DNA of 64,000 nt from the NCBI RefSeq assembly GCF_002571385.2, contig NW_019217790.1, positions 1,399,996 through 1,463,995 of the forward strand. The letters run 5' to 3'. Positions 18,768-63,259 of the stretch are shown in pieces. The notes beneath the pieces were generated by a model that ran no database searches, was not told the DNA's origin, and saw only the letters and a program-made list of their open reading frames with translations. Origin of the DNA: Stylophora pistillata. Taxonomy: Eukaryota. Each line of letters starts with the position of its first letter. The first letter of the stretch is position 1. Both the position numbers and the translations under genes were made by a program.

Positions 18768-21700
18768 TTAGTAAAGAGCAGTCCCAGTTTTTTGTATTTC
18801 CTCTTCAAATCCCGCATTCTTTTCCTCGCCCACTGTAACTGCTTTTCCATTAGATGAAATGTTCGCATCTTTGACATACTTTCCACTCCCTCTCCTTCTT
18901 GCCCTGGCATTTTTCCTGAGCCTTTTCACTAACAGATGTAACATAAATGTCACAAACGAAACCACCATTAAAAAGCCCACAACGGCAACTGCAAGAACTA
19001 AACTCGATATTGGCTTCTTTTTATATTCTTTGTCGCTGTCAGGCTTGGATTGCGCTAAAACAAAACGAAACAAATATTTTCGATCAGTTATGTGGATGCT
19101 AAAGACGATTGTTTTCGTGAGTGTTCTCTCAAGTTGAATGGTTCTGGATCTTTCATCACTCGGTGTACACTGTGATGTTGTAATATATTCCTTTGTTGTT
19201 CATTCAAGATGAAAAATGTTCAGACTCATTCGCGGCGGCACCGATTTACCTTTTCAGCTTGCCCCCATTAATATGATCTTTACTGAGACCTATTTAATTG
19301 TTAGAAAATGAAATAGGAGATATGTAATTCTGTCTATCCTGGAAGATATGTAATTCTGTCTATTCTAGAACTAAACTAATATTATTTATTATCCAGCTAT
19401 GCTTCGTAAAGTACAAATAACGCCCAAAGCGAGTACAAATATCTCGCAGTATTTGTACTACAGAGAACAGGTTAGACAAGTTTTCTCGCATTGCGCAAAC
19501 GACGAATTAATTGAAGCTAGGAAAAAAAATGGCGGACGTACTCCCTGTAGATAATCTCTTATTAGACATTTTGTTGTGTTGTATCTCTGAGTACTTTTAC
19601 TCGTTGTTTGTATTTTGACGAGCCCGCAAGGCGAGTCAAAATACGGCACAACTCGCAAAATATTCAGCGATACTATAAAACAAAACGTCTAATAAGATAT
19701 ATGTATTATTTAATATTTATTTAGTATAAATCGGGTAACATTCTATCACAAATACCGCAATCTGATTGGCTCTGCAACTCGTTCTATATTCCGTGATAAA
19801 TAGCTAGTATAAAGAGACGCCTAACAGTGTCCAGTTGTCAACAAAATAGAAAGAAAACACGAACCTATCCTCAGTTTTGAACGACTAGTAGACTTAAAAT
19901 AAAACGGTTTCTATCTATGATAGTATATTCGTGCGTCCCCCTCCATCAGCTATCAAGCGATAGAAATCTTGCGCTGCTCATAGTCCAATTGTTAAATACA
20001 GTGTATTGATTTTTGATATTACCTGTTGTCCCTATCTTGCTCTCTTTGTTTGGATCACTGTTAAATCCTCCGTTAACTTTGGAAATAACTACAGGGTTTG
20101 TTCTAAGAATTCTGGGAGTTGTCTCTGAAGAGAAAATGAACAGCGTGAACAGTGAGAAAATAACAAAACCTTTTTTTTACCTCCAACATCTAAATACCAG
20201 TCATCTTGTAGATCGAAATTCAATTTCTTGACGAGTCGTTAGTGTTTAGAATTAAGCGCTTTATCGAATAATCTTTTCGCCATTCTGCTAAAGATATATA
20301 TTTTTTTTGTTCTCATGATCCATATCAATGGCTGTTAGTTATTTCCGGAATACAATTGACAGTAGGATTTAAATTTAACCTTGGCCCGTTATCCCAAATT
20401 TATCTCAAACCACAATATCGTTTTATACGCCCGCGTACGTGTGTTAGCCTTCAATCTTGATTTCCTCGATCGTGGTTTCAAGCCGCAGACTGCTTGCGGG
20501 CGCCAAAAGATCGTAATCGATACCGCAACAAACAGATTGCGATTGTCCGGCGGTATCCAATCACTTCGAGTCCTAATGGTACTGTATTGGAGGAGTGCGG
20601 TCTGTTGGCTCATCAGGAGCACGAAACGTTTTAAAGTTGTTTGTGGAGGGCGGGAATGATTTGCGGTTCGAGGATTTTGAGAGGAGTTCACCGAAAACTG
20701 TGTGAAATTTTATCAAAACGTGCGCAAAATTTATATTTTAAAGGTGCGCAAGTTCATTATTACGTACCACCAGAATTTATCCGCGGATAGAAATCTAAGA
20801 GAGCATATTATTAATGATATATCAGAGATTGATTATCGTCACTACGGGGCTGAAAGGTAAAATCAAACCAGTTTCACTGAAATTTGCCTCCGGTCTTTTC
20901 GTCCAAGGGTCTTTTCGTCCAAGGGTCTTTTCGTCCAAGGGTCTTTTCGTCCGAAAGTCTTTTCGTCCAAGTCTTTTCGTCCAAAAGTATATTCATCTTA
21001 AGTCTGTACGTCTAATTGTTAAGTCTTTCCGCGAAGCAAATAAATAACTATTATATTATATTACAGATAAGGCTATATAAAGAACTTACGTATACCAGTG
21101 CGAGCCGTTGCCCTTTTGGTTCACCAATCTTCGTTTACGTCATGAATTTAACGATAAATACACAGAGAATGAATGAAGTTGTAACGCAATATATTTTATT
21201 AAATAGTGGCAAAAATAAAGAATTGCTTGCCGCTTAATTATTTCACGCGAAAGAAATGGGAATATTAGACTTGTTGTTAAGTGTCTATTGAGCGTAAAAG
21301 GCAACGAAATGTAACATCACTACGTGTCCGACATACCCAACAACATAGTAAACCTTCGTTAGAGCGAATGAGGAAGGATTGGTGACTAAAGCTATCGGAA
21401 CTAAAATGGCGGCGGCTCGCAACAAGTTCTTTATATAGCCTTATCTAGCCTTCTAAAAGTTATTTATTTGCTTCGAGAAAAGACTTAACAAGTAAACGAA
21501 CAGACTTAGGTGAAAATACTTTTGGACGAAAAGATTTCAAAACAGGTCGTGCTAATAACATAGGCAAATTGGCTCATATGTATTTACATCAGTTATATGA
21601 ATTCATTGCCTTGTGTGAAGTGTTACGGATGATCGACCAAAGGAGTAACATTTTCACCGAAACTACTTTCAGTACGAAGTATATTTTCAGTGCAGTTGGG

Positions 21701-24700
21701 TTTCTATGATTGCGCAGAAGTGCCTAGACACCGTATTCGATGCTTCAACGTGTAATAGGACGTGTATTTTCTGATTTGCGTAACAATTTTTAAGACGAGT
21801 TGCCCGTCGGGGCGAAGAAAAGTACGGCTAATGAGGTGAGATATCAAACCATCCAATAAGGAATTTGTTAATCCACCATGATTTCAAAATCTAGTATTTT
21901 GGCTTCCAGTTTTCGAAATTCGTATCAGAGCCTCGTCTGTGCATCGTATCGATCGCTGAAGGTGAGCGCAAAAGAGAAAAACAAAACAGACGAAACCATC
22001 AAAGTATTATCATGGCCAACAAAAACATTTATAGCACTGTTGCCCAGCTGTTCTGCAATGTGATAACGTAGCTGATTTTTCGCGTCCCAGTGCCCTAATA
22101 TGGTAAAATGGCGTAATTGTGGAACGGCGTATTTTTTGGAATAATAATTAAAAAGATAATGCGGCGGGATAAAGTTTAATTGATCTGGTACCAACCTAAA
22201 ACTTGGGTTTCAGTTGTATTCGGCCATGGTAGAGGCCAGTGAGAAAGCTTGCACAAACCATCTCCGGCATGAATTTCAGGGTAGTAAGGTATACATTGTG
22301 GAAAGTCGATGTTGTGCCTTTTAAATTCCTCGTCACAATCACGTCTCACCTCCTGGCACATTGATGGACAGGCATGAAGGGTGGAGCCATCATTACTTAC
22401 ACAAGGTGCAGTCTCAATGAAGCAGGCAAACCGTCTTAACTTGACAGAGCAACTTGAGTTTAGGACAGGGCTGAGATCGCTGAGAAAAGACCGGAGTCGA
22501 TTTCTCGTATTATTTCCTAGGCCACTGAAATTGTCTTTCAAACAGGCAGGCCGACTTGCCGTTTCACAACTTGGTAATAATGGCTCTACGAAACAATAGA
22601 AAAAAAAGACACTTTTCCTTTAGTATTCTAGTTTAATGTGTTTATTTAGTCCTTTTAGTTCCCACAGTTCGTCCAAAGATCTAACGTAAAGGAGGTTAAT
22701 GAACCACTGGTAAAACTTGACAAGTTTCTACATGAAAAGTTCTTCAGTGGCAATGTTTAAGAATATGTCAATGTTACTCGAAACGTCGCCTTGACACGTT
22801 CCCTTATCCAAAATCTTAACATGCCTTTTTTTTTGGACTTAGAGATTTGTCAAGGGAAAAGTTAATTGATCTAGTAACTTGCTACAGGAAACTGGCAGAA
22901 TACCGTTATAATGGGCTCCTGTTTAAAGAGAATTTCTATTCTTTGCCAGCAAGTTGCCATTGTCAAGTACCTTTAAATCTTATTTTTTGTCACTAATGGC
23001 TTAATTCTCTCGCGGTAGCGAACAATTCATGCCAAGTACTCATCACGTGTTATCTTTCCCGGCCATGTGAATGTAGGTAGTTTCAATATCTTGTTAGTAA
23101 GAAGTGGTGTAACCCAAAAACCTTACACCTATCTTGAGTAAAAGGCTAGCTCTCGAAACTTCAGCCTTTCAAAATTAATTGCAGAAATGACCGAGCCCTT
23201 CTCGACTTCAAGTTGTTGATGACTTAAGTATTGCGGAAATTCCGCTCGCCCGCCAACGCTCCAAACAGATTTTCAAGAAAAAAAATTTACTCTGATTTTT
23301 TACGACTTTTGTTTTCTTGATTTTTTAAAATCTCTTGAACTCACAATTTCAAAGCAACGAATAGGAAATGGTACAACTCAAAAACAAAACAGCAACTCTG
23401 CGGGCAGAACCATTTATAAAAATTCAACAGATTTCAATGCAACTCACTGCTATTTTTGGCCAAACATCGTTCAATACGCATGGAACTTGTTCGATATCGG
23501 ACCCCAAATAGGATACTTGATTTCACTCTTTCTTAAAATATTTACACTATAACTTCATGAAGCGAAAATTTGAATTTGAAAGACAGCAGTGGCTAAGAGT
23601 GAAACAAACAAAAAATCATAAACGATGTCAAAAGTCAAACATCTGCGAGACTAAGAGCAACCCAGCAAAGTTTGTCGCAAAAATTAAAACAAATTAATAA
23701 ATAAGATTAAATATGTTTGAGTCAAGCGATCTAAGTACGATGAACAGTTAAATTCTGCGCGTGCGCGCCTTGTTACCTGTCGCGTGAATTTTGCCGACGT
23801 TTTTATACCGCCACGAACGGAACTGTGAATGGGGAACTTCTTTCATTCTATAAGTCTACGAGAGAAAGTTTTGAATCGTTTATACCTGATCACTCTCTTA
23901 TTTTCGACGCAGTTTCGTGTGCTGAGTTGTTTTGTTCTACAAAAAACAAATATTTAACACTTGACATGAAAGTCTGTATAACGTTTTATATTTTCACAGT
24001 TCGTTTTTTGTTTGCACGGTCTGTTTAAAGAGGTTGCTATCACTACACATAAACAGCGAAAATATTTTTTTCATCGTCACGACATTCCGGACTAATTTGC
24101 CAAGTGTTTAAAATTCTTTGATCTAGAGATGCCATCAGTCTTCAATTCGATCAATAGGTGCCTTTATGAATTTTCTTCCCTGTTATAAAATGCATGCATT
24201 TTAATTTTTCTAAGTTGTTAGGACATTTGTTGAATAGTTGAAGTACTTGTAATTAGAAATATTAAGCTGGCGGGGTAAGTTCTTTTATCATTAGTGTCAC
24301 CAGAGGATTTATTGCATAGGTTTCAACCTTTGAACCAGTGTTCGATGTTAACGGCCCACGTGAAATTGTAAGAAGCCGATCAGTGGCATGAAAATAATTT
24401 CAAGAGTGATTTTTTCATTAAACGAAACCCGAGGGTAGCTTTGTGTGTCCTCCGAACTAAATTTTGCTCAGCTGAGGCAAACTCAAATTGAATTACACTA
24501 GGTACTTTTCAGTAAATCAAACTACGGCTGAATTGTTTAGAAAAACGTATGAGTGAAAAAGATGCACCTTTTTTCGTTTTAAGAACCTTTTCATGATAGG
24601 AATATCTGGGTTGAATTGGCGAAAATCAATGAAGATGTTAAAAAATAGTGCCAAAGCTGAGATTTAATTGAGAAAACATTTTGGCGTTTTGATGGAAAAT

Positions 24701-25568
24701 GATTTAAAAATACTATGAAATCACTTTTCTCATATTAACTTTCCCTCATCTTTGAAGTTTTAATAATAATAATAATATATTTATATAGCGCGTACATCAA
24801 ACACTTCTCGTGGCGCTTTACAATACTATGAAATAATAAAATAACCTAATAACCTAAGTTTTGCAGTCAGTGAGTTGATGTGATGTTCTTTTTTTGCTAA
24901 CAAAACGGCTTGACTTATAATTCATTGCACAAATACCACATGAATTGTAAACAATATTTAACCAACGGTCGTCTATAAATTTCAAAGAATATATTTAGCT
25001 TACGCATCAGAAACATACATTGTAATAAAGTGTGTGCAGCTAGAAAACTTCCTAAAAGATTGCAAAAAAAATTCAAGAATATTATTCAATTTTTCAGTAT
25101 ATGCTCACCTTTTTTATTTGGTCGAGGAACAAATCCAGCTGGTTTTAAACATTGCATAGATGCTTCTCTCTTAGAAGAAAGAAGTCTACAGTAGGCAACG
25201 TAACGTCTATACAGTCCACTGTCTTTTAATTCTTTATGACAATCGTCCACAAATTGATCACACACTTCTCTACAGGGTAGAATGGGGCCTTCGACGTCCT
25301 TGGAACATTTCGGAAGGTAACAAGAGCACACGAACATCCTAGAATAAGGAGAACAACTGTTGAAACGATCAGAAAAGTGGGTGACTTCTGATGAAACATG
25401 CTCTTGATAGCTCCGTCCTCCAATTTGTGAAAAATTCGCTGTAGATTTGTAGCCAACGTTGGCGCAAGCTGGAAGCTGAGTAACGTCAATTTGTTGGCAT
25501 TTGCCAGCGTATGTCGAATCAAGAGTAAGAAAAAACGCGCAGTATAAAATCAAGAGTATGAGAAACAT
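18768..25568 (-). CDS. Double Frizzled-CRD single-pass membrane protein, gene A; exons 25109-25568, 22196-22585, 20023-20124, 18768-19054
   Basis: Signal peptide MFLILLILYCAFFLTLDSTYA; CRD1 (..CSPYSRMFVCSCYLPKC..PILPCREVCDQFVDDC); CRD2 ending GLCKLSHWP; TM LVLAVAVVGFLMVVSFVTFMLHLLV then KRLRK. All introns phase 1, GT-AG. Confidence 0.8.
19550..19702. repeat. Short fold-back (hairpin) repeat; similar hairpin elements at 29823-29942, 39869-40046 and 31020-31210 (related copy ~45060-45382)
   Basis: Self-complementary arms visible in sequence, e.g. tcttattagac...gtctaataaga and tatcttattaaccaagc...gcttggttaataagata. Confidence 0.7.
20890..21545. mobile_element. Probable non-autonomous DNA transposon with subterminal tandem repeats
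   Basis: About six copies of a 14-16-bp unit gtcttttcgtccaagg at 20893-20985, and inverted degenerate units (ttttggacgaaaagat) near 21470-21540. Confidence 0.55.
24762..24826 (-). mobile_element. 3' tail of an L2/CR1-type LINE or partner SINE
   Basis: Minus strand reads ttgtaaagcgcc...gcgctatataaat followed by an (att)n tail. Confidence 0.55.
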
Positions 25569-28500: not shown

Positions 28501-28572
28501 TACAAGACTTTTGATGGAAGAAGAGCAATGACTTCTCTTAAAGAAACAATGAGGAAGAGTCTTGATTTCGCG

Positions 28573-31500
28573 TTATGCAGTCGGGTCATCAGGTTCGGTG
28601 TAAGTCGATCGCTGCTGTGTATAACCGCTTGTCCTCTGGTTGTAGCGCCTGCGCACAGTTATGGCAAGGTAGATGAAGATGATCGCAAAAAGTGGCACCA
28701 AAACGAGGGCAGCAATGAGACCCGGTGGAAAGGACTGGGGCGATATTATATTAGTCCGTGGACCTAAAAGGGAAAGAACAAAGCTGGTCATAAGATGAGC
28801 TTCAAAAAAACTCTGACAGCAAGGACTGGCCCGTTAGATAACGAAGGCGCATTTATGGAAAAAGGGTATTTTCCATTTTAAATTTTTACGTCAGATTTTA
28901 GCCGGTTAAAAGCCTTCTCTGTCGTCGGAATTCTTTTTTTGACTAAAAACGAAAAGGCTTCAAAACATTTCCGCCGGCGCCCCAGCAGACGTCAACACTT
29001 ATGATTCACGCGACAAAAAAATTGTTTTGCAGAGTATGAGGAACAAAAAATGTACTTTATTGTCTTCCTGAATATCACCCGGTCCGTCTTGATGTTGAAC
29101 AACGTATTTTATACAAGGACAATTACTCAATCGTTATTGATGATATTTTGAAGTCTATATTTGTTGATAAAAGAGGGGAAAAAACGGCAGAATCACGTAG
29201 GAAGTTCTTGAATATTGCCAGATCGCTTAAATTTACGAAAGACATGACCCAACGTCCTCTACGCAAGTGGCTATATTTGGCATAAATTGCAAATAACAAT
29301 TCCGTGTTATCAAGTGTATAGAGGCGTTAAGATTGAATTAGGGAATATGAAGAAAAGTTTATTCTGGGAAAATATAAATATTGACCAAGGACGTGAGATA
29401 GTACACTAATAAAGTGATGTAAAAAAAAGAGAAGCTAACAAAACCGCCGATACCACTGACAATGCTGATACATTCCAAAGTTGTTTCATGGAGGTGATCA
29501 AACTCATTGTCGTTAACTGCATAGAAGGAAGCTTTCGCTTTTACCGTGATAGGGGAGGAAGTGAAGTCAAAGAGAATAAATATATTTTGAGTTGGAGAAG
29601 TTTTAGTACACAACAGATTGCATGGTTTGTGTAGCTAAGGTAATGTTCCACTCACAAATGACCAGTTTATGCACGCATCCAAAATTGAATCAGTACCAAA
29701 GAAGCTCTTACCTGAATACAGACATTTGGTGTTAAAGTTAGCTTTTAGAAAATCTCAAAAACTAGCTCATGATGCAGAAAAATATGTTAATTCTGTCTTA
29801 CGTAGATAGCTTAGATTAGAAATATATCTTATTAACCAAGCGCGAGGGCCGTACTGGGAGAATATCGCTCGGTCCGTACAAAAAAGACTGAGGGCCGATA
29901 TTCTTCCAGTACGGTTCCGAGCAAGCTTGGTTAATAAGATATATTTAATTTGTGAAACCGGCTGAAACCAATATTAGAAATGCATGTGTGAGACCTTCTA
30001 TTGATTCACTGGTTTGGAATTTCACGCGTTGTCGGCATTATACTGACCCCCCAAAAAAGAGTTTTGCGGTGAAACGCGATTTGACGCGACTGGAAAATTG
30101 AAAAAGTTTTCGAAATTGTTCATATATTGCTGAAAATTTAAACAGGCATCACTGAAGTAAAACTAAGGTTCTCACCGAAAGCAGAGGAATTATTATGTGA
30201 GGATTTTCAATTGCACTGATTTGTTCTCTCTCCGTCTCTCCCCTGCAAAAGCATGTACAGCAACCTAGCGTTTGTCAGAGGACGATTTTTTAAGTCTGTT
30301 CTCTGAAATTTCCAAAAGTTTCCTTTGTTTAGTTCATCGACACAAGCGAGCCTCTTTCCAACCTTAAATGTGTCCAGTGTGTGAGTAATCGTTTTGGGAC
30401 AAAGCATAATTGGCCAGGCTTTTCTTCAAAAATTACCGACAACAACTTCGCAAGGCGTGCTCATGTTGAAAGGATTTGTCAAATCATAACGAGACAGAAT
30501 ATCTTGCTGAGCAAACTAATGCTGGACAAATTTTATGCCTCCCAAAATTTTAGGATTCTGACGACACCCAGACGAGATATTCAATGTAAAGAGCTTATTC
30601 AGAATGATACAGCCAGTCTTGTAGTATAAGCATCCTATTAGAAATGGTCAAACCCAAGACTGACGCTTAAATAATCCGAAACCACCATGATGACCCATGA
30701 TGCCACACGAACTCTTCAACGTGCCATCAGAATAATTATTTCTGACTAATTCGTTCCCATATCACTCAAACGTCAGAAATAACATTTTACTGTGGGAAGA
30801 GGTGGAAGAAAGGGAATGGGGTTGGGCGAGAGCTTCCAAGCCTTCCCACTCCTCCTCCGCTACCTTTGATGGTAGCTGGACGAACAGTTTGCGATCAAAC
30901 TATGAAGTCAAATTCTCTCACAGCAGTCACATTATCTCTTAATGTCAATCTACAATGCATTTGTTATCTAAATGGTTAAGATAATAACCAACATGATGAT
31001 TTGGCTGCTATTTTTAATTAACAAATGGTAAACACCACAGCGTACACTATTGAGTTATGGATGCACGCGGGAGGTTGCTAAGCACGAAAGAAGCGTAAGA
31101 GTCGCTCGAGGCGATAGCCGAGAGCGACTCTAGCTTCCTGAGTGCTTAGCAAACCTGCCAAGTGCATCCATAACTCAATAGTGTACGCTGTGGTGTTTAC
31201 CATTTGTTTTATAACATAACATTGATATATTGTAGCTAAAGAGTTCCTTTTATTTAACAAATCTTACGCGACCAGAAAAAACAAACGCGCGCGGAAAAAT
31301 AGTCTTTGCATTTGCTCACGTCAGCAGCGTACACCCATGGGCAAATGGGGGACGCTAAATTGACCAATCAGAGCGCGCGCTTTACTTTGGTTATGTTATA
31401 AAGAGGTATATTCGGTGAGAAAGCCTTCTTATATTCTCACCTGATTCCCAATGTCTCGCACTTGGCCACCTGTTTAGCTCACAAAAACCGCTTTTCGAAT

Positions 31501-39000: not shown

Positions 39001-39513
39001 AGATGAATGTTTAAAAGGGCGTAGCATTAATATAAATTTTTACTTACTTGTGTTGTCAAGTCGCGGCCTATAATTTCCCGGCAGATAACATTCTTTTCCT
39101 TTGCTGTTATTCTCCGATGACGGCAGCAGATGACAAAGTCCTTTAATCCATTCCAGTTTTTCGTATTCCACTTTCGTCTCACAGTCTCTGACAAAATATT
39201 CGCAGACTCTTCTACATGGCAAAACAGGGCTATAGTTTTCTTCCACGCATTTGGGAACATTAATAGCGCACATAATGGTATCTAAATATTGCGAGCAATG
39301 CCCAAACTGTTGTACTTCCCGTTTCAGATTATGCGCGATGATGCTTTCGCGTAGCGTAGAATTACCGGGAAATTTAGCCGTAAAATTATACCCGGCTACT
39401 TGAATACATCTTTGAAATAAATTCGTATTTAGTCGTTGGCAGATTTGACCGAAAACGGCGGTTAAATACACCAAAAAGAGAGAAATTATCACTGGTGTCA
39501 GCGCAATATTCAT
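36033..39513 (-). CDS. Double Frizzled-CRD single-pass membrane protein, gene C; exons 39048-39513, 37179-37589, 36033-36316
   Basis: Signal MNIALTPVIISLFLVYLTAVFG; CRD1 with GYNFT and CAINVPKC..PVLPCRRVCEYFVRDC; CRD2 ending GFCTLTKWPTAGRW; S/T stalk; TM LPVVAIIVSTVVVVLSIIVVTAFLLLL; tail LGYKRH. Confidence 0.85.
36710..37035. repeat. Dispersed repeat rich in ttttcggttt; inverted related copy at ~50860-51257
   Basis: gggcattgggatcttcggttttgcgg at ~36710 versus aaaaccgaaaatcccaatgccc at ~51235-51257; shared gcggcaattatgc core. Confidence 0.65.
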
Positions 39514-39890: not shown

Positions 39891-39926
<36 letters not shown>

Positions 39927-49900: not shown

Positions 49901-50537
49901 GTCTGTCTCTCTCTTACCCATACAGTCTGTCAGTCAGTTCATCAGTCAGTCCATTTCCAAGTCTGTCAGCTAGCCAGCCAGTCAGTTCATTAGCTAGTCC
50001 ATTTCCAAGTCTGTCAGTCTGTTTGTCAGCTAGCCAGCCAGTCATTTCGAAATTCATCAACCAGTCCATTTCCAAGTCTGTCTTTCTGTCAGCTAGCCAG
50101 CTAGTCAGTTCATCAGTCAGTCCGTTTACAGATCTTTTAATCAGATCTTTTAATCAGTCAGTCTGTCAGCTGGACAGCCACTCAGTACACCATCATTCTG
50201 TCAGCTAACCAGCCAGTCACTCAGTGCGTCAATCAGTCTGTCCATGTGTCTCTACATTTGTGGGTGTGTCCCTCTTCCTTTCCTCTAAACTGATCTTAAT
50301 TTTCCCGATCAATTATTTCTAGCTGCAACAAAATCTCCGAGTCTGATCCTCGAGAGCCATATGCATCATGGTATCAAAGTGTGGCAGATTTTCATAGCCG
50401 TTTTTATTCCTACACTAGCTGTTGGGCTTGCTGTAGCAGTGGCGATATGGATGAAGAAGAGAAGTTCTCGACATTTAGCAGCTTACATCAAACATTATGA
50501 AAGAGACGCTGATGATACCTTTCCCTTGGACACGTGA
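46975..50537 (+). CDS. Double Frizzled-CRD single-pass membrane protein, gene E; exons 46975-47473, 48704-49031, 49686-49798, 50323-50537
   Basis: Signal peptide; CRD1 ..CSLVVPKC..PVYPCRQVCAEYLRRC; CRD2 PLDRGCQELIFPAC...GYCQSTKWP. The last exon (absent from the ORF track) reads ATKSPSLILESHMHHGIKVWQIFIAVFIPTLAVGLAVAVAIWMKKRSSRHLAAYIKHYERDADDTFPLDT*. Intron 2 has a GC donor and contains an N-gap. Confidence 0.85.
47490..47633 (+). mobile_element. Short dispersed repeat carrying a minimal hammerhead-like motif; copies at ~34351-34445 (+), ~48254-48360 (-, partial) and ~53459-53605 (-)
   Basis: gct-CTGACGA-a-GGGC-taac-GCTC-GAAA-tg-TC-agc followed by a shared body ttattcgttac.gtggccaatttac..tttcaac. 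Confidence 0.65.
49885..50245. repeat. Degenerate (CAGT/CAGC)n simple repeat in gene E intron 3
   Basis: Recurring cagtc, ctgtcag and agccagcc units; explains the spurious Ser-rich ORF 49870-50208. Confidence 0.75.
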
Positions 50538-53155: not shown

Positions 53156-55340
53156 GTGAATATTTTCAGCTTCCATTTGTCTCTTAGTACAGCGGTACAT
53201 ATGAATTTGGATAGTGCACAGTAGTAGATGTTTTGTGAAGCTTGAGGAACTTTTATTTTGTCAAAGGCATCTATAGGAAGGTTGGATTGAGGAGAAGCTT
53301 AATAAAAAGGGGACTTATTGAAAGGTGAAACAGAGTTCAGAACTTGAATTAAAAAGTATCTTAAAGCTAACCCTTCTCATCAAAATTGTTCCCAAAATTG
53401 CATGCTAGCCTAAGGTTAATGCTCTCTTGAAACTGAAATCTTATCTGTAAAGGCTGATAGTTTCGAAAGAAACTGTTTGGGGCTGTGTCGGTGGGGGTAA
53501 CGAAATAATTTGGATATATCAACAAAGTTGAAATGGTAAATTGGCCACTGTAACGATTACAAAAGCTGATGTTTCGAGTGTTCGCCCTTCATCGCAGCGA
53601 ATAGAGGAATTGTGGGTTGTGTGTGCTTTTAAAGGCAGAAAATGGAGCTATGTTNNNNNNNNNNNNNNNNNNNNNNNNNNNNNNNNNNNNNNNNNNNNNN
53701 NNNNNNNNNNNNNNNNNNNNNNNNNNNNNNNNNNNNNNNNNNNNNNNNNNNNNNNNNNNNNNNNNNNNNNNNNNNNNNNNNNNNNNNNNNNNNNNNNNNN
53801 NNNNNNNNNNNNNNNNNNNNNNNNNNNNNNNNNNNNNNNNNNNNNNNNNNNNNNNNNNNNNNNNNNNNNNNNNNNNNNNNNNNNNNNNNNNNNNNNNNNN
53901 NNNNNNNNNNNNNNNNNNNNNNNNNNNNNNNNNNNNNNNNNNNNNNNNNNNNNNNNNNNNNNNNNNNNNNNNNNNNNNNNNNNNNNNNNNNNNNNNNNNN
54001 NNNNNNNNNNNNNNNNNNNNNNNNNNNNNNNNNNNNNNNNNNNNNNNNNNNNNNNNNNNNNNNNNNNNNNNNNNNNNNNNNNNNNNNNNNNNNNNNNNNN
54101 NNNNNNNNNNNNNNNNNNNNNNNNNNNNNNNNNNNNNNNNNNNNNNNNNNNNNNNNNNNNNNNNNNNNNNNNNNNNNNNNNNNNNNNNNNNNNNNNNNNN
54201 NNNNNNNNNNNNNNNNNNNNNNNNNNNNNNNNNNNNNNNNNNNNNNNNNNNNNNNNNNNNNNNNNNNNNNNNNNNNNNNNNNNNNNNNNNNNNNNNNNNN
54301 NNNNNNNNNNNNNNNNNNNNNNNNNNNNNNNNNNNNNNAGTGTTCTCCATGCCTTACAAATTCAATGTCAGACAACATTAAATTGAGTCTCCTAATAATA
54401 ATAATAAAACGTATGATACACGATCCTCGCAGTAGAGAGCGCTATTTATGCAATTGCGAAAATTAACTTTACGGCCTGCTCCCAGTTGGCTTGTTAGCTC
54501 AATTGGTAGAGCGCTGCACTAGAATCGCAGAGGTCAGTGGTTCGAATCCCGTACAGGGCTGATTTTTTTTCAGGTCTGATTTTCGCTATTGCATAAATAG
54601 CGCTCTCTACTGCAAGGATCTTGCATCATACGTATTATTATTATTATTATGGAAAAGGAAAACATAGAAATTGATGTAATCCAAATTTAGGAAAATGATC
54701 AAAAAATAGTCTTCTCCTTGTCCACCAGACAAAGTGGCAGAGTGACCTCCTTGGCAAATACGGAGGAGGAATTTGATCGCTCGATGCTACCTACAAGACA
54801 TCCCGCTACGCCCTTCCTCTATTCTTCCGTTATTTTTACCTTTAAACAAGATAACTTGTCATTAAAGTACATACTTATCAGCAAAATGTTGTCTTCTCCT
54901 CTTACCTTCCATCACTGAAACCTGGTTTTGGTCGATGTTAGATAGTATTTAGTGGCGTGTCGACACTAAATATCATCGACCGAAACGAGCCTCAGCTAAG
55001 TTCCTCGGAACGACCATAAGCCACGTAATTCGGCGCAATACTGCTGAATCTATTGTATATTTAACAGTTTTTAGCAATATAAACTGTTAATGTCAAAAAT
55101 TTACCCTTTTAATTTTAAACTCAAATCAACATTCTCGCTGCGATCAATCAAATGAGCGGAAGTCGAGGTTTCATTTTGTAAGACGCCGCTGACATATCGA
55201 TGACTCATCTGGTTTAGGTCGATGTTGTGAATATCAGCCTGCGTTGTCATCTGGTGTCAACAAGCAGCAGGAATGCGGTATTAAATTACGACCAAGCAAA
55301 ACAATTTTGACGTGAAGAAAGAACTCTAGCATCACATATT

Positions 55341-58300
55341 ATGCCTGTTTATTCAACAGAATTACCAAGCTGCTTTTTTATCAAGATCAGAGCGCTGTTA
55401 ATATGCAGCTTGGGTGTTCTAACCGTTGTTCACGGTGAATCGATAGAAGGCAAATGCGTTAGCCTTTCGAATGGACATTTCGATTTCTGCACAAAAGGTG
55501 GATACAACAGCACGCTATCATTTCCCAAGGAATTCACAGCGGAGCGTCAGGCCCAAATGGCCGAATTTTTAATGTTCATCATAGAGCAATGGAGAAATTG
55601 CACAACTACTAGTCTGGCAACAGCTATGGAATGTTCGTTTTTCCTGCCCAAGTGCAGTTCGGAGGGAACACGCGTCTATCCGTGCAGGCGAGTCTGTGGA
55701 GAGCTGTTGAAGCAGTGTCAGAAAGACACAGGCGAATTCCGGGAGCTCTACATGGACTTGTTTCTAGCCTCGTGTTTAATTCTGCCAAATGAAACAGCGA
55801 GCAGTGAGAAATGCTTCGAGCCACCTGGCTTCAGTCCAAATAACAACGTATCGAGTAAGTTTGTGGAGTCTATTAATTGTTTTTTTAGTCACCAAAACAA
55901 ACCCTGTTCCAGACATTGAAAGCAACAACGCAATCGTACTGGCGAGATACGATAGAATGGGAAAACAGTTTTCCTTCTTTTTCCTAACTTTTCTGCGCGT
56001 TTTCATGTGTCATTTGATCACCGGGACCAAGCTGCTTTTTTTTTGTTACTACCTCTCAGAGGTAGAATATGGGGGAGTGGGACCGGTTCTGCTAATACCT
56101 GACTGAGGAAGGGAGGGAGGGAAGGATATTGTCACGCAAATCGCGTTGTGAGTATTATCAAGTTCAAGGCGGTGAGTCTTTACTCATTAGTGCAATCCTT
56201 ATAGGCATGAGGAAAACTTGTTGAAGACCGCCTTGATGAAGACTGCCTTGATGAAGACTGCCTTGATGAAGACGGCGTTTCACAAGCATTTGCATTTATC
56301 CTAGGCTTTTTCTTATCGGTTCCTTGTTATGTTTCCTTTATTTTGATTGGTTGCTGATCGCTCATGATCATTGTTATGTTTCTCAGTCGAAATGTGATTT
56401 GAAAGTCTTTTGTTTTATTTTTTCGTTTTTCTTTCCTTTAACTGTAGGCCCTCTTGATCGCGGCTGTCAAAACTTGATCTTTCCCGCCTGTAAAAACCTG
56501 GGTTTATACAATCACACCATCTTTACAGAGTCAGTCCAGAAGAAGCTTTACTATCTTTTTTACAACAAGACATACGGCGACGGGCAACTGTTAGATCAAG
56601 GTTTTCCCATGGTCCTTGAAATGCAGGTGGCAAAGTATCCGAAATGCGCGACAAACATAAAAAAATTATATTGTGGAGACCTGTTCCCTCCATGTTTTCC
56701 AGAGGAAGGGAGTCCCACATTTAAAACCTTGTGCAGATCGGTTTGTAATGATATTCAAAGGGAATGTCCAGATTATTTCGGGTAAGAGTATATCTTAGAA
56801 GTATTCAGATTGTGTCTTGCTCGTTGGCAATTAGCGATCGGTACTACTAGTATGTGTAAAGGCGAAGCGTTATCCAAAAGGTTGGAGCGCTGAATTCTGT
56901 ATCGAGAGATCCGAGATGAAACGACGGTAAGTTCAAAGTGTTATGTCTTGGATGACATTGCCTCTAACCACCCAAGACCATAATGGTTACCAGCGAACTG
57001 TTTTAAAGGTCCCNNNNNNNNNNNTCCTCCTCCTCCTCCTCCCTCTCCCCCCCTCGTTGACAATTAATTTTCTATAGCCTCCCTTTTATACTTTGTTGGC
57101 GATGACTGATGCCCCGTCCGTTCCCCCCTGCAAAACAGTGTGATCTTTAAAAAAAAAAAAATCCTTCCCTACCCTCCCCTCCCCTAGATAGAGACTGATC
57201 TCTTCTCTTTTTTTTTGTATGTGTTTTTTTGTATTTGTTTTATTTATCAAAGTAAAGCTTAATCGCAATTGCGTCTGCGCTTTCCTTTTAGAGAAAATTA
57301 CTTGAGTGCGGAAATGTGTGCTCTCTTTGCACCGGGGAACACGAGTCATGGCTTTTGTGATCGCACAGAATGGCCTGAACCGTTTTTCTGGCTGACATAT
57401 TTGGGGGAAGGTGAGCCCTTACTAAACCTTTACGTCCTAACATCAGTATTCATATTCTCCATACTGTTCTCTTTACATTAATTGCCTAAGATGCGGACAA
57501 GGAAAATTTGTGTAACAATCAAGAACTACTTAAGTTTGTGATCTTTTCCTTTGTGTAATTTTCGGATGATAAGAGATGCTAGCGACTCTTAGTGGTAAAA
57601 GGGTTTTCCTGTGTCTTGCTTTTTTGGCCTATGAAACATTGCGCTAATCAAATTGAAGCAATTTAGTAAGGATTATCTCAATAGAAACCTGGATATAGGT
57701 TATATTACAGAATAAACGAGACTTACTTTGTTGAAGAACATTCCCACGGTTTCAGGCTTGCGCAGTAAGTGGTGAAGCGAGAAGAGGTTTCACTCAAAGT
57801 TCTGCCTTGATTTTTGTCGAGCGCTCAAAAGACTACCTGTTACCGTGACGATGGCTAGCTCAGTAAAGAACTGGAACAAAAAGTCAATGCTTCGTATGCA
57901 TAAGATTCTCAGACATATAAGACATATAATCATCATTGGACAGTTCATATAACGGAGTCAAAGATCATTCGATTTGTCGTGACTTCAATACCATACCCTG
58001 AACAAAGAAGTAGTCCTCAAAATTGCCACGATTTCTCTGAAAGTTAATGTTGCATAGCATAAAAAAAAGAAATCAAGTCGGGTAACAAAAACGTCTCTGG
58101 TCATCATGTCTATCATCGAAACTGGCAATTATCTAAACTCTCAGGAGTGACAAAGAAGTTATATCTCCTTTGAATATGAAACGTGGGCGCGTAGCCAGCT
58201 TTTCGACTTGTTCCAGGCATTTTAAGAGATCTGTAAGCGTGCTAACCCAGCGCTTTAACATTACGAGATTTATTCTTGCTGCTTCTTTGTCGTTTTTGAA

Positions 58301-58719
58301 CTCGAAAATATATATGTCTTGATAAATATATCATGAAAGTCACGCAACGGCAAAAAAATTGTCAGCCTACGGGGCTACAGGCTGATCACGCCCCTATGAA
58401 ATTTGATTCAACATCAAACTCTCAGATCCAATATAATAAGAAATTTGTAGCAGACAGTAAAGGGAACTACTATTGACATATTGGGAGTGAAGGGGCTAAT
58501 CAACGGATGAATCGTTTCACAGATTTCAACACGGAACCACCATCAGTGGAACCAACCGATGAAGGACCTAAAGGGTGGGTCATTGCCGTGGCGGTCTTGA
58601 CATCCCTCATTATTGTTGCACTCGGACTGGCTGGGCTCATCTGGTGGAAGTGGCGTGGAATCGCTCCTGCTAGCTGGCTAGGTTACAAGAAACAACAAGA
58701 TTTTACAAACGAAGAGTAG
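55341..58719 (+). CDS. Double Frizzled-CRD single-pass membrane protein, gene F; exons 55341-55854, 56448-56781, 57292-57410, 58523-58719
   Basis: Signal ..RALLICSLGVLTVVHG; CRD1 GYNST..CSFFLPKC..RVYPCRRVCGELLKQC..CFEPPGF; CRD2 PLDRGCQNLIFPAC...GFCDRTEWP; TM WVIAVAVLTSLIIVALGLAGLIWW; tail LGYKKQ. Intron phases 1, 2, 1. Confidence 0.88.
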
Positions 58720-60309: not shown

Positions 60310-63259
60310 TTACAACTCGTCCATATCCACCATAAGACTATGTCTATATTGGCTTTTGATTCGATGGAATCTTCTGAAGCAAACAACACCAGCTGCAATG
60401 GCGATTATAAGGACGATTACACCAACCACAATGCCTGCAATAGTTCCTCCTGACATTTTAGCAGCCTTGGTCGCGCTCACTTTCGGGGTCAGACCTGCAA
60501 AATACAAGAAATATTATCAAATATCAGGTTTGTTTAGAAAAAACTCATTCCTTTTTGCCAGGGTGGTTGGAGGATTTTGGACGTGTCACAATAAGATTTT
60601 CAATTTGCAGTTGTGATTTTAAAGCCCCACCCTCCCCCCTCACCATAGTGGTTATGTGTAATAGAGTTCCCCTTTGTACTCTGTTAGTGACCTTTAATCC
60701 CTCCCCATTAGCGGTTCCTTTAGAACTCTAGAATTCTCCGACCTTCCCCCTCCCCTCCCCCACCAAGAAAGAGAAATAACGACTGGTCCTTTATGAGGTA
60801 GGCCTCGGGAGGGAAAATTTATGCCGCAAGCTACAACTCAATCATTTCAAAGCAAATGCACATACTTCTCCCTGGCAGTAAACTGTGATTCCAAAAACTC
60901 AATGGGTGACATGACGAAATGTTCTCCTCAATTGGGCTCTTACCTTTTTTGGTTCCTTTGGTTATTGATGTAGGCGTAGCACTAGGCGAAGGCGTGGGTA
61001 CCTTGGTCGCCGGAGCCGACGTCTTTTCCTTGGTTGATGGCGGAGGTGTGGTTCCCGCAGTGCTAGATACATGTGAGCTGGGTTTATTAGAAGGAGATGC
61101 AGGCGTGGTTACCTTGCTCGCCGGAGCCGACGTCTTTTCTTGGGTTGATGACGGAGGTGTGGTTCCCGCATGGCTAGATACATGTGAGCTAGGTTTATTA
61201 GAAGGAGATCCGGGCGTGGTTTCCTTGGTCGCTGGAGCCGATGTCTTTTCCTTGGTTGGTGGCGCAGGTGTGATTCCCCCAGTGCTAGATACATGTGGGC
61301 TGGGTTTATTGGAAGGAGATACAGTCGTGGTTACCTTGGTTGATGATGAAGGCGCGGGCGGTGTAATTTTATTCGTGGAAGTTGAAGGTGCGATTACCAT
61401 GGTCGATGGTGAAGGTTTGGCAGCCTTTGTACTAGCTGAGGTCGAACTGGTGTTATTTATGGTCGTTGTAGGCGTGGTGGCCTCACTCGATAGTGAAGGT
61501 TTGGGTGTCTCAGTGGTGGGTGCAGACGGCATGCTTTTGTAGTTCGACGTTCCAGGCGTGGTTACCTCGATCGTCGAAGTTGGCTTGGTTACCGTAACCG
61601 ATGGTGAAGAGGTTGAGTTGGGTGTGGTTGTGTCAGTGATTGGTGAGGACGTTGGGGGATAAGTTGACGGTTTAATTGGGTTTAACATTCGTGTTGTTTG
61701 ATGCGTGGTTACGTTGGTTGTTTCAGTTTTTGGTTCAGTTGTACTAATACTGGATGGTACTGTTGACTCCGTTACGGAATTCTTCTTCTGTTGCGCTGAA
61801 AGATACAGACACAAACAAAGATGTAAAAACCACAAATCACTTGCTTTTGGAAAAAAAAAGTCATTGGAACTTAAACAATCCGTAAAATACCTGTCATTTC
61901 CAAAGACATCCACAAACCGCTGGGCCAGTAAACATGGTCCGGCCACTTTTGGAGTTGACAGAGCTCTTGTCCACGTTTTGTTCCGTTTGGGAAAGCTAAG
62001 CAGTATTCTTGGTCTTTGAACACTTTGTTAAACTCTGAACGTGACTCTTTAAATGCATCATCGCACAAAGACTTGCAGGGAACTTGTAACTGCGTAGAGG
62101 TTTTGTTATCGCATGGCGGCGCTATCTCCATACAGATAACCTTACGAAGCTTGGTTGAGTTACCATCGACTCGTTGAAAGATTGTACTTGAATTCACCAG
62201 CTTCTGATAGTCACTCGTAACAGAAGTATAATTATAGCCAAACTTCTGACATTGTTTCAAAACAAGCATGTGACATGTGACATCTGAAAAATGAATACAT
62301 AAAGAACACAAAAAAGTTCAAATGACTTGATATTTTGAGGTCTGTTTTCAGTGACGTTTACGTGTATACTTTTGAGCAAAGAGAGATGGTTTGCGATCAA
62401 ACTTCAAATAATATTTTAGAAGAAAATTATTGCAATTTCAGTTCGGTTCGAAAGCAAATAACAAAAGTAAAAAAAAATTTTGTCATAATTGTTTGCATAC
62501 CAGAAACGGTGAGTCACCTGCTAAACTCAAAACACCTTCTAAAAGGCTTTTAATTTTGAAGCTGCGCCAAATGTTGAATGTAAAACCACCGATGCATGAC
62601 AATTGCGTGTTTCTAGCGTGATCCTCTTGAACTTACACAATTATTGATATTGCAAACTAGTTAGTTTTGCATAACGTTCAGCGGTTACAAATAGCACGGC
62701 TCGAAGAAAATTGTTTAAATATTCAAATCTCCTGGTGACTCGCAAGGCATAATTATATTGCAAATCGAATGTTAGCTCGCGTACTCTACCGAAAAATTGT
62801 CGTGTACTTACTAGAATTATCTGTGCCATTGTCGTTAGAATGGTTTGACTTTGATATACAATTGGTCATCGGAAGAACCTCGCAAAGGCCGCGGAATAAA
62901 GATTTTAATCCATCGCGTTCGCTTGAAGTGTTCCCACAATCAGTTAGAAACTTCTTGCACGTGTCTTTGCAAGGTAGCTTCGGCGAAGAGCATTTCGGAA
63001 TATGAAGCGAGCAAGTCATGAGATCAGACAACGAGGAGCAGTTAAACTTTCCCTGCATGTGGGAAATTAGACTTGACATCTCTTGTATGCTCGAATTCGA
63101 TGCGGAAGAATTGTGAAAGCCCTCCTGTACGCAGTTTTTGAACAAAGTCGTGTTAAGCGGCTGACATTTTGAACCTGAAGCGAAGTCGAGGAGTAAAGCG
63201 TCCAAAGAAACGAAAAAGAAACCAGTGAGAATCCTCATTGTCAATTTTTTTGGCGACAC
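60310..63259 (-). CDS. Double Frizzled-CRD, mucin-stalk, single-pass membrane protein, gene G; exons 62812-63259 (alternative ATG 63238), 61891-62283, 60944-61795, 60310-60494
   Basis: Signal MRILTGFFFVSLDALLLDFASG; CRD1 CSLHIPKC..LPCKDTCKKFLTDC; 8-Cys CRD2 ending LCQLQKWP; 284-codon Thr/Ser/Pro exon; TM IAGIVVGVIVLIIAIAAGVVCF; tail SQYRHSLMVDMDEL*. All introns phase 1. Confidence 0.85.
60985..61320 (-). repeat. Coding tandem repeat, 3 x 111 bp (37 aa), in the gene G mucin stalk
   Basis: gctagatac recurs at 61062, 61173 and 61284; unit PSNKPSSHVSSTAGTTPPPSTKEKTSAPATKVTTPAS. Confidence 0.9.

What the first reader, a model, noticed from the sequence alone, without database searches (positions are those of the whole stretch)
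18768..63259. Cluster of seven genes for a single-pass receptor family with two tandem Frizzled-type CRDs
Seen: seven spliceable genes (A, B, C minus; D, E, F plus; G minus), each encoding signal peptide + CRD + CRD + S/T/P stalk + one TM helix + a ~25-55 aa tail. They have Frizzled 10-Cys spacing (C-x8-C-x6-C, PC-x3-C-x6-C) and GYNxT-like motifs, with intact frames despite strong divergence. Established: Frizzled and Smoothened are 7TM, sFRPs are secreted, ROR and MuSK have kinases, Corin is a type II protease and MFRP carries CUB/LDLa domains; none has this layout. CRDs bind lipid moieties (Wnt palmitoleate, sterol in Smoothened). Inference: a lineage-specific receptor array acting as Wnt decoys/co-receptors, or as diversified lipid/ligand sensors in immunity, allorecognition or symbiosis. 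It may extend past the window edge.
Basis: partly seen in the sequence, partly recalled or inferred. Interest (0 to 1): 0.92.

Follow-up and report, generated by a model that had tools for sequence, protein, structure and literature searches.

The report
Coral double Frizzled-domain membrane protein cluster
This stony coral carries a tight cluster of at least nine genes for cell-surface proteins made of two Frizzled-type ligand-binding domains, one membrane anchor and a short conserved tail; corals and sea anemones share the family, I found no paper describing it, and it gives new candidate regulators of Wnt-type signalling to test.

Summary
The window is Stylophora pistillata (G000:C7:1399996-1463995). 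All 14 predicted CRD exons hit Pfam Fz. They assemble into seven intact genes, A-G: signal peptide, CRD1, CRD2, stalk, one TM helix and a tail of about 21-58 aa. Gene D equals RefSeq XP_022790618.1 exactly. Spliced transcript contigs cover D and F from start to stop, so no 7TM or kinase is attached. Every N gap lies in an intron or between genes.

Both CRDs are Frizzled-type by profile and by fold. The cluster continues past the window with gene H and a six-CRD gene I. All 11 strong CRD1-type matches in the 398-Mb assembly lie here.

The family is not species-specific. Orthologues occur in the same order in Pocillopora, and in Orbicella, Oculina, Montipora and Nematostella, all labelled 'uncharacterized'. 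Two or more paralogue lineages predate the coral/anemone split. dN/dS is 0.24-0.40, which argues against a fast-diversifying immune array.

The tail carries a conserved Y-x-K/R-Q motif. The FZD lipid groove is only partly conserved.

Wnt binding is untested. I found no paper on the family, and the scan had not reported it on other DNA. Verdict: a real, undescribed architecture built from a known domain.

The parts
18768..25568 (-). Gene A, 412 aa. CDS exons 25568-25109 (signal peptide + CRD1), 22585-22196 (CRD2), 20124-20023 (stalk), 19054-18768 (TM + 58-aa tail + stop).
   Evidence: Pfam Fz on both CRD exons. The C-terminal 334 aa equal database protein P0114. GT-AG, phase-1 introns.
28573..34074 (-). 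Gene B, 351 aa. CDS exons 34074-33597 (CRD1), 31827-31441 (CRD2), 28763-28573 (TM + tail GYTQQ...).
   Evidence: Pfam Fz. Colinear with the three exons of Montipora XP_068732213.1/P0060 at 45-65% identity, and with the Pocillopora neighbour at 66-74%.
36033..39513 (-). Gene C, 386 aa. CDS exons 39513-39048 (CRD1), 37589-37179 (CRD2), 36316-36033 (stalk + TM + tail).
   Evidence: Pfam Fz. The Pocillopora meandrina orthologue at L007:5454-8314 has three colinear exons at 73-85% identity. The CRD2 AF2 model matches only Fz-type CRDs. The third junction has no transcript support in this species.
41597..45915 (+). Gene D, 388 aa (LOC111330084). CDS exons 41639-42140 (CRD1), 43286-43613 (CRD2 first part), 44142-44257 (CRD2 end), 45428-45648 (stalk + TM + tail GYKKQ...). 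The span given is that of the transcript contig.
   Evidence: The model equals XP_022790618.1 exactly. Spliced transcript contig L002 aligns at 41597-42141 / 43284-43613 / 44140-44268 / 45419-45915. AF2 model and fold matches.
46975..50537 (+). Gene E, 384 aa, or 374 aa from the second ATG (LOC111331942). CDS exons 46975-47473, 48704-49031 (GC donor), 49686-49798, 50323-50537. Gap 49158-49343 lies inside intron 2.
   Evidence: The C-terminal part equals RefSeq isoform X2, P0169, across the gap. The Pocillopora orthologue P0297/P0164 is colinear with no residues missing.
55259..58719 (+). Gene F, 387 aa. CDS exons 55341-55854, 56448-56781, 57292-57410, 58523-58719. Gap 57014-57024 lies inside intron 2. 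The transcript contig continues to 60444 as 3' UTR.
   Evidence: Spliced transcript contig L001 (99-100% identity in the coding exons) and its product P0160.
60310..63238 (-). Gene G, 618 aa. CDS exons 63238-62812 (CRD1), 62283-61891 (CRD2 with 8 Cys), 61795-60944 (mucin-like S/T/P stalk with 111-bp repeats at 60990-61340), 60494-60310 (TM + tail).
   Evidence: Pfam Fz just under the cut-off per exon. Colinear with the four exons of Pocillopora meandrina CAH3149631.1/P0070 at 45-80% identity. Tandem repeat.
39514..41596 (.). Divergent intergenic region between the C and D start sites (about 2.1 kb), the point where the array changes orientation.
   Evidence: Positions of the C start codon and of the 5' end of transcript contig L002. 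The same C-/D+ arrangement is found in Pocillopora.

Best explanation
The cluster encodes an anthozoan family of type I cell-surface glycoproteins. The ectodomain is a pair of Frizzled-type cysteine-rich domains (a CRD1-type followed by a CRD2-type), held on a short or mucin-like stalk. One TM helix follows, then a 20-60 aa cytoplasmic tail.

Shown: the genes are intact. D and F are transcribed and spliced as modelled, and A and E match database proteins. The proteins contain no 7TM, kinase or other catalytic domain. Both domains have the Fz fold. The family and its tandem arrangement are conserved across stony corals and sea anemones under purifying selection.

Inferred: the CRD pair binds an extracellular ligand at the cell surface. 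The most likely ligand is a Wnt or another lipid-modified or cystine-knot ligand of the kind FZD, sFRP, ROR and MuSK CRDs bind. The proteins would then tune signalling as tethered co-receptors or sinks. The tail motif Y-x-K/R-Q followed by acidic residues is shared by both ancient clades. It suggests the proteins are not passive decoys but are coupled to tyrosine-based signalling or regulated trafficking.
For: - Domains: Pfam Fz on all 14 exons. Only Fz or Fz-like families are found on full-length members.
- Profile matches: the CRD1 profile hits FZD10/8/4 CRDs at 2e-13 to 5e-12. The CRD2 profile hits FZD8 at 8e-11. CRD1 and CRD2 profiles match each other at 96% hhalign probability.
- Fold, CRD1: gene D CRD1 aligns to the FZD4 CRD with Z 9.8, rmsd 2.9 A over 112 residues.
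- Fold, CRD2: for the gene C CRD2 model, the top 12 of 48,161 PDB chains are all Fz-type CRDs (Z 9.3 to 5.4), and the next chain scores Z 4.0.
- Gene models: D equals XP_022790618.1, and transcripts L001 and L002 span start to stop.
- Topology: one TM helix and short tails.
- Conservation: the same gene order occurs in Pocillopora and adjacent genes in Nematostella. The tree shows Nematostella members in both major clades. dN/dS is 0.24-0.40.
- Tail motif: YxxQ in 27 of 39 tails against 3.4 expected from shuffles.
- Lipid groove: the positions equivalent to FZD4 F82, L132 and F137 are mostly hydrophobic (residue list from PMC5458758).
Against: - No binding or expression data for any ligand exist.
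- The positions equivalent to FZD4 L85 and F135, both needed for the WNT5A response (PMC5458758), are polar in most members. Canonical palmitoleate binding is therefore doubtful for several paralogues.
- The complex prediction of the D ectodomain with a coral Wnt gave no answer, which counts neither for nor against.
- The tail motif is missing in A, C, E and G of this window. The count of 27 of 39 is inflated by relatedness among the sequences.
- Fz-type CRDs also bind non-Wnt partners (Norrin, sterols, toxins).
Confidence: 0.45

Rival explanations
1. Diversified sensors. The paralogous CRD pairs recognise varied non-Wnt ligands (sterols, fatty acids, microbial or symbiont molecules, or allogeneic cues) and act in immunity, symbiosis or allorecognition.
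For: The genes form a tandem array of at least nine strongly diverged paralogues (20-35% identity between most). Stylophora and Pocillopora orthologues share only 77-82% amino-acid identity although both are pocilloporids. G has a mucin-like stalk. The canonical FZD lipid-groove positions are not strictly kept. Smoothened-type CRDs bind sterols (PDB titles).
Against: Pocillopora has one-to-one orthologues in identical order. The paralogue lineages predate the coral/anemone split and show no recent burst. Gene-wide and per-exon dN/dS are 0.13-0.52. All strong family matches sit in one locus with no dispersed expansion.
Confidence: 0.2
2. Passive membrane-tethered antagonists. The proteins are natural equivalents of sFRPs or of engineered CRD-TM constructs. 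They simply sequester Wnts at the surface, and the tail serves only as an anchor.
For: The layout is that of a CRD on a stalk with no catalytic or scaffold domain. Secreted CRD-only Fz-related genes proposed as Wnt modulators exist in annelids (PMC4669655).
Against: The tail is not free to vary. Y-x-K/R-Q plus an acidic run is conserved between anemone and coral members of both clades, and the H-type tail is nearly invariant. Last-exon dN/dS is 0.26-0.52, not neutral.
Confidence: 0.2
3. Surface or matrix glycoproteins whose CRDs mediate protein-protein adhesion or protease/ligand docking unrelated to Wnt or lipid signalling, in the way Fz domains are used in corin, carboxypeptidase Z or collagen XVIII.
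For: Fz domains occur in many non-Wnt contexts (ESM Atlas neighbours: corin, MFRP, CPZ). Poly-Fz giants without a TM helix exist in many animals. There are 4-17 N-glycan sequons per ectodomain.
Against: At profile level the best matches are true FZD receptors, ahead of sFRP3, Sizzled, Smoothened, ROR2 and MuSK.
Confidence: 0.12
4. Annotation artefact. The exons are pieces of larger Frizzled/ROR-type genes, or are decaying pseudogenes.
For: B, C and G have no transcript support from this species. Gene I, outside the window, carries one in-frame TGA.
Against: Full-length spliced transcripts for D and F have 5' and 3' UTRs and stop right after the tail. All seven frames are open and dN/dS is below 0.5. 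Pfam finds no other domain. Orthologous 1.2-2.9 kb transcript contigs exist in several corals.
Confidence: 0.03

Closest known systems
Frizzled receptors (FZD1-10), extracellular CRD
   Same: FZD CRDs are the best sequence-profile and fold matches for both domains (FZD10/8/4 at E 1e-11 to 1e-13; Z 8.8-9.8). The family shares the ten-Cys pattern, the GYN-x-T sequon and partial hydrophobic groove positions.
   Different: There is no 7TM domain (no PF01534 hit) and no KTxxxW Dishevelled motif. There are two CRDs instead of one, a single TM helix and a 20-60 aa tail.
Secreted Frizzled-related proteins, Sizzled, and the CRD-only FzCRD1-3 of Platynereis (PMC4669655)
   Same: These are stand-alone Fz CRDs without a receptor core and are proposed Wnt modulators. 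sFRP3 and Sizzled are significant profile and fold matches.
   Different: They are secreted, have one CRD, and (for sFRPs) carry an NTR domain. The coral family is membrane-anchored, has a CRD pair, no NTR, and a conserved cytoplasmic motif.
ROR1/2 (Nrk) and MuSK receptor tyrosine kinases
   Same: They are type I single-pass proteins with an extracellular Fz-type CRD. ROR2 (Z 9.3) and MuSK (Z 8.8) are the top structural matches for CRD2.
   Different: They carry Ig and Kringle domains and a cytoplasmic kinase. None of these is present here.
Corin (two Fz domains) and MFRP
   Same: Both are membrane proteins that contain Fz domains. Corin has two (ESM Atlas neighbours).
   Different: Both are type II proteins with LDLa, SRCR and protease domains, or CUB and LDLa domains. 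In corin the two Fz domains are separated by LDLa repeats rather than placed in tandem.
APCDD1 and RECK (functional analogies only)
   Same: APCDD1 is a single-span protein with a lipid-binding ectodomain that inhibits WNT signalling (PMC10193966, abstract). The Pfam family FZ_RECK gives secondary hits on most CRD exons.
   Different: APCDD1 is named in that abstract as having an unusual ectodomain architecture, and I did not compare it here. RECK hits are weaker than Fz hits, and from my own knowledge RECK is GPI-anchored and multidomain.
Uncharacterised poly-Fz proteins of bilaterians, octocorals and Montipora
   Same: They are repeats of the same domain type and the best-scoring database hits to the CRD1 profile. 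Examples are Penaeus (13 domains), Branchiostoma (15), Asterias, Ptychodera, Oryzias and Xenia.
   Different: They have 5-15 CRD1-like repeats, mostly no TM helix, and no alternating CRD1/CRD2 unit.

Membership tests
Fz domain superfamily (Pfam PF01392) | Match to the Fz HMM above the curated cut-off | tested here: met
   Twelve of 14 exons score above 32.1 bits when scored alone. G's exons score 28.4 and 31.6 bits, but its orthologue scores 51 bits with two stretches. Full-length D, F, A, B-type and H-type members score 60-75 bits with two stretches each.
Fz domain superfamily (Pfam PF01392) | Ten conserved cysteines in the canonical spacing | tested here: met
   CRD1 has ten invariant Cys in all seven genes. 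CRD2 has ten in six genes, and G lacks the third and eighth.
Fz domain superfamily (Pfam PF01392) | Fz CRD three-dimensional fold | tested here: met
   CRD1 of D aligns to the FZD4 CRD with Z 9.8 and rmsd 2.9 A over 112 residues. For CRD2 of C in an unbiased search, the 12 best of 48,161 chains are all Fz-type CRDs (Z 9.3-5.4) and the next chain scores Z 4.0. Both are predicted models (pLDDT 76 and 78).
Wnt-binding FZD-type CRD (functional class) | Hydrophobic palmitoleate groove (FZD4 T81, F82, L85, L132, F135, F137; PMC5458758) | tested here: inconclusive
   The residues were mapped through a HMMER profile alignment. The F82, L132 and F137 equivalents are hydrophobic in most members. The L85 and F135 equivalents are polar in most, and the H-type keeps the most. 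The alignment is at about 20% identity, and CRD2 was not mapped.
Wnt-binding FZD-type CRD (functional class) | Physical binding of a Wnt | not testable with these tools
   The one complex prediction (D residues 37-315 with coral Wnt P0322 residues 1-310) returned 'no answer', which is evidence neither for nor against.
Frizzled/Smoothened class F receptors | Seven-transmembrane Frizzled domain (PF01534) | tested here: not met
   There is no PF01534 hit on any full-length member. A hydropathy scan finds a single TM segment. Transcripts end after the short tail.
Secreted Frizzled-related proteins | Secreted protein with a C-terminal NTR domain | tested here: not met
   There is no NTR hit, and a TM helix is present in all seven genes.
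ROR/MuSK receptor tyrosine kinases | Cytoplasmic protein kinase domain, plus Ig or Kringle domains | tested here: not met
   Tails are 21-58 aa, and there are no kinase, Ig or Kringle hits.
Corin / MFRP | Type II orientation with LDLa, SRCR and trypsin domains, or CUB domains | tested here: not met
   The proteins have an N-terminal signal-like leader and a C-terminal TM helix, which is type I topology. None of those domains is found.

The most novel reading that the evidence does not exclude
These are a cnidarian class of kinase-less, single-pass Frizzled-CRD receptors that actively signal. Binding of a Wnt or other lipid-modified ligand to the CRD pair would lead to phosphorylation of the conserved tail tyrosine (Y-x-K/R-Q, the consensus known from gp130-type STAT3 docking sites). 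An SH2 effector would then be recruited. This would be a Wnt/lipid-ligand receptor route distinct from FZD, ROR, RYK and MuSK.
Probability: 0.1. Interest if true: 0.85.

Novelty: new variant of a known kind. Interest (0 to 1): 0.55.

Why it matters
Wnt signalling patterns the cnidarian body axis and is heavily studied in Nematostella and Hydra. In the papers I could search, the catalogued Fz-CRD proteins are Frizzleds, sFRPs and CRD-only relatives. This report identifies a conserved family of membrane-tethered double-CRD proteins, with at least nine clustered genes in Stylophora and several in Nematostella. Databases call them only 'uncharacterized' or 'FZ domain-containing'. If they bind Wnts, they add a layer of cell-surface Wnt control in corals and anemones. 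That hypothesis can be tested in Nematostella, which has orthologues of both clades. If they bind other lipids or ligands, they show a new use of the Fz fold. The conserved tyrosine motif gives a concrete handle for mutagenesis.

Tried and rejected
Transcript evidence comes instead from Logan contigs L001 and L002.
- Complex prediction: D ectodomain (residues 37-315) with a coral Wnt (P0322 residues 1-310, obtained) gave 'no answer', ipSAE 0.00, and the controls were not run. This counts neither for nor against binding.
- A single-sequence phmmer search of D against PDB gave nothing at E<=0.01. Profiles were needed.
- The ESM Atlas search by features gave no usable hit. By structure it returned only generic Fz-containing clusters with TM-score <=0.37.
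- Foldseek on the two-domain model gave only weak E-values (2e-3), although all top hits were FZD CRDs. VIA-align and a single-domain model settled the fold.
- Literature searches by topic, by architecture phrases and by accession or locus names found no paper on the family.
- The held supplements of the Stylophora cell atlas do not list these genes.
- Yan et al. 2014 (Gene 533:229), on domain fusions of Frizzled-like CRDs, is not held. It might mention related architectures.
- I considered and rejected the idea that the exons belong to 7TM or kinase genes, and the idea that assembly gaps hide coding sequence.
- Joined spliced models of A, B, C, E and G were built only inside scripts, for hydropathy, tree and dN/dS work. 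They were not sent to any search or fold tool. Those tools received single exons by reference or database protein ids.

Full report
IDENTITY OF THE WINDOW

The window has 39% G+C and five N runs. It is G000:C7:1399996-1463995 of a 398-Mb assembly. My spliced model of gene D is identical to Stylophora pistillata XP_022790618.1, 'uncharacterized protein LOC111330084'. The organism is therefore this stony coral, as an earlier scan note had said. The first 17 kb hold a RanBP2-like gene, exons of an MCM helicase and a GNAT acetyltransferase exon. They are not part of the finding.

THE OBSERVATION

Six-frame ORF listing shows seven pairs of cysteine-rich exons between 18.7 and 63.3 kb. All 14 hit Pfam Fz (PF01392), with E-values from 5e-15 to 2.6e-6. 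Many also give a weaker hit to the RECK Fz-like family. In CRD1 the ten cysteines and the GYN-x-T-like sequon are invariant or nearly so across the seven genes. CRD2 has ten cysteines in six genes. Gene G lacks the third and eighth, which agrees with the separate note s1-791869.

GENE MODELS

- The intron between CRD1 and CRD2, and the one after CRD2, are phase 1 in all seven genes.
- D, E and F share an extra phase-2 intron inside CRD2.
- All splice sites are GT-AG except intron 2 of E, which is GC-AG.
- Product lengths are A 412, B 351, C 386, D 388, E 384 (374 from the second ATG), F 387 and G 618 aa.
- Each has a hydrophobic N-terminal leader (weak in B and E), one strongly hydrophobic C-terminal segment and a tail of 21-58 aa. 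The ectodomains carry 4-17 N-glycan sequons.
- The 'S/T/P stalk' is pronounced only in G: 327 aa, 56% S/T/P, built from 111-bp repeats.

Support for each model:
- D equals the RefSeq protein.
- Logan contig L002 (1,483 nt) aligns as four exons of D, and L001 (2,926 nt) as four exons of F. Each has UTRs and a stop right after the tail.
- The C-terminal 334 aa of A equal database protein P0114.
- The C-terminal part of E equals RefSeq isoform P0169.
- B, C and G are supported by colinear orthologues from Montipora and Pocillopora, not by transcripts of this species.

Joined models other than D, which exists as a database protein, were used only inside scripts and were not sent to search tools.

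ASSEMBLY GAPS

- 49158-49343 lies in intron 2 of E. P0169 and the Pocillopora orthologue run through both flanking exons with no residue missing.
- 57014-57024 lies in intron 2 of F, and transcript L001 bridges it.
- 51891-51912 and 53655-54338 lie between E and F.
- Nothing was filled in.

WHAT THE DOMAINS ARE

- A profile of the seven CRD1 exons finds FZD10, FZD8 and FZD4 CRDs in the PDB at 2e-13 to 5e-12. sFRP3 and Sizzled follow at about 1e-6.
- A profile of CRD2 exons finds FZD8 at 8e-11.
- The full-length family profile ranks FZD first, then sFRP3, then Sizzled, then Smoothened, ROR2 and MuSK.
- CRD1 and CRD2 profiles match each other at 96% hhalign probability.
- An AlphaFold2 model of D (pLDDT 76, pTM 0.64) aligns its CRD1 to the FZD4 CRD with Z 9.8, rmsd 2.9 A over 112 residues.
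- A CRD2-only model of gene C (pLDDT 78) was compared with 48,161 representative PDB chains. Twelve Fz-type CRDs came first: ROR2 9.3, MuSK 8.8, FZD4 8.8, FZD2 8.3, Nrk 8.2, Smoothened 7.7, Sizzled 7.2, sFRP3 7.0 and others. The first unrelated chain scored Z 4.0.
- Pfam finds nothing else on full-length members: no 7TM Frizzled domain, kinase, NTR, LDLa, CUB or protease.

EXTENT OF THE CLUSTER

A six-frame search of the whole assembly with the CRD1 profile gives 11 matches at E <= 7e-24. All lie at C7:1.425-1.492 Mb. The next match, elsewhere in the genome, is at 1e-12.

Beyond the window lie two more genes:
- Gene H (window-equivalent about 68.5-77.2 kb, minus strand) is 83-91% identical to the Pocillopora LOC113676195-type protein.
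- Gene I has six CRDs in the order 1-2-1-2-1-2 plus a TM helix. It is colinear with the 866-aa Oculina protein XP_078378798.1. It carries one in-frame TGA where a conserved Cys is expected.

The array therefore has at least nine genes in about 73 kb.

DISTRIBUTION AND EVOLUTION

The profile search of 1.8 billion representative proteins found 1,602 proteins at E <= 1e-3 and 71 at <= 1e-30.

- Proteins with the CRD1-CRD2-TM-short-tail layout come from Pocillopora, Stylophora, Orbicella, Oculina, Montipora, Nematostella and Actinostola. They also come from many 1.2-2.9 kb Logan contigs encoding full-length proteins, which are most simply read as mRNAs.
- Every name given is 'uncharacterized', 'hypothetical' or 'FZ domain-containing protein'.
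- Pocillopora meandrina has B-, C-, D+, E+, F+ in the same order and orientation. Nematostella has adjacent D-like genes.
- A maximum-likelihood tree of 34 members gives two well-supported clades. One holds G, H-type and Nematostella LOC5500375/LOC116617516. The other holds A, B, C and D/E/F, with three Nematostella proteins sister to the scleractinian D/E/F group. At least two lineages therefore predate the anemone/coral split, and D/E/F arose within stony corals. Long branches (A, C, Montipora G) make some placements unsure.
- Stylophora versus Pocillopora dN/dS (Nei-Gojobori) is 0.40 for C, 0.25 for D, 0.24 for E and 0.31 for F. Amino-acid identity is 77-82%. This is purifying selection on fairly fast-evolving proteins.
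- I did not find the same layout outside Hexacorallia among named proteins, but the searches cannot exclude it.
- Other layouts built from similar CRDs exist: a secreted 2xCRD protein in the sponge Sycon, a multi-CRD + LDLa + TM protein in Branchiostoma, a two-FZD-like-CRD + TM protein on metagenome contigs of unknown origin, and poly-Fz giants in many bilaterians.

CLUES TO MECHANISM

1. Lipid groove. DeBruine et al. (PMC5458758) list FZD4 T81, F82, L85, L132, F135 and F137 as the palmitoleate-contacting residues, and report that F82A, L85A, L132A and F135A each abolish the WNT5A response. I mapped these through the HMMER profile alignment to FZD4. In CRD1 the F82, L132 and F137 equivalents are hydrophobic in most members. 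The L85 and F135 equivalents are polar in most. The slowly evolving H-type keeps the most. The groove is thus only partly conserved. At about 20% identity the mapping is approximate, and CRD2 was not mapped.

2. Tail. 27 of 39 non-redundant tails contain YxxQ, and 25 contain Y-x-K/R-Q. Shuffled tails give 3.4 and 0.7, but relatedness inflates this contrast. The motif, followed by acidic residues, occurs in both ancient clades. Examples are GYKKQEND in D, GYKKQQD in F, GYTQQ in B, FDYQKQILYSED in H-type and PYDKQILYSDD in Nematostella. From general knowledge, YxxQ is the consensus of gp130-type STAT3 docking sites. Whether that has any bearing here is speculation. The conservation does argue that the tail does something.

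3. Complex prediction. The D ectodomain with a coral Wnt gave no verdict and is not used as evidence.

INTERPRETATION

The structural statement is secure: this is a conserved anthozoan family of type I membrane proteins with a tandem pair of Frizzled-type CRDs. The functional statement is inference from what Fz-type CRDs do in FZD, sFRP, ROR and MuSK. I favour cell-surface binding of Wnt-type ligands, with modulation of signalling and a tail that signals or directs trafficking (about 0.45). A role as diversified sensors in immunity, symbiosis or allorecognition is less likely, given stable orthology and purifying selection (about 0.2). A purely passive decoy role is disfavoured by the conserved tail (about 0.2). 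An adhesion or other non-Wnt use remains possible (about 0.12). An annotation artefact is essentially excluded.

NOVELTY

The domain is well known. The proteins are present in databases under automatic names. I found no paper that describes the family or its layout. One possibly relevant paper (Yan et al. 2014, Gene 533:229) could not be read. I class the finding as a new variant of a known kind, of moderate to good interest, because it can be tested directly in Nematostella.

Noticed in passing
window 58521-60444 (+) versus 60310-60494 (-): Transcript contig L001 of gene F continues about 1.7 kb past its stop codon. It overlaps, in antisense, the last coding exon of gene G. This is either a true convergent 3' overlap or a merge made by unstranded assembly. 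Identity in this stretch is 96.6%, against 99-100% in the coding exons.
   Followed up: partly
L005 (G000:C7:1483996-1493995), about 1484-7917, minus strand: Gene I is a six-CRD (1-2-1-2-1-2) + TM member, colinear with Oculina XP_078378798.1 (866 aa). It has one in-frame TGA where a conserved Cys of the last CRD2 is expected. That CRD2 is also split by an extra intron or insertion. It may be a pseudogene, a polymorphism or a sequencing error.
   Followed up: partly
L003-L004 (G000:C7:1468538-1477148), minus strand: Gene H is the most conserved member, 83-91% identical to Pocillopora. Its tail, ...QFDYQKQILYSE.KA.EFEIFT, is almost invariant from corals to Nematostella.
   Followed up: partly
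window 49032 (E intron 2 donor): Intron 2 of gene E uses a GC-AG splice (donor GCAAGT). The RefSeq isoform and the Pocillopora orthologue both read Ser-Gln across this junction.
   Followed up: yes
proteins P0137 and P0129 (ENA metagenome contigs, organism unknown): These proteins have two canonical FZD-like CRDs, one TM helix and a 33-aa tail. The same layout has apparently been built independently from different CRDs.
   Followed up: no
proteins P0001-P0017 and others: Giant uncharacterised proteins with 5-15 tandem Fz domains, mostly without a TM helix, occur in shrimp, starfish, acorn worm, amphioxus, medaka, the octocoral Xenia and Montipora. They are the top scorers for the CRD1 profile.
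   Followed up: partly
   Followed up: partly
G000:C5:1153477-1176048 and C162, C37: Wnt genes in this genome also sit in tandem clusters. One of them (locus L011) ends in a long basic C-terminal extension after the Wnt domain.
   Followed up: no
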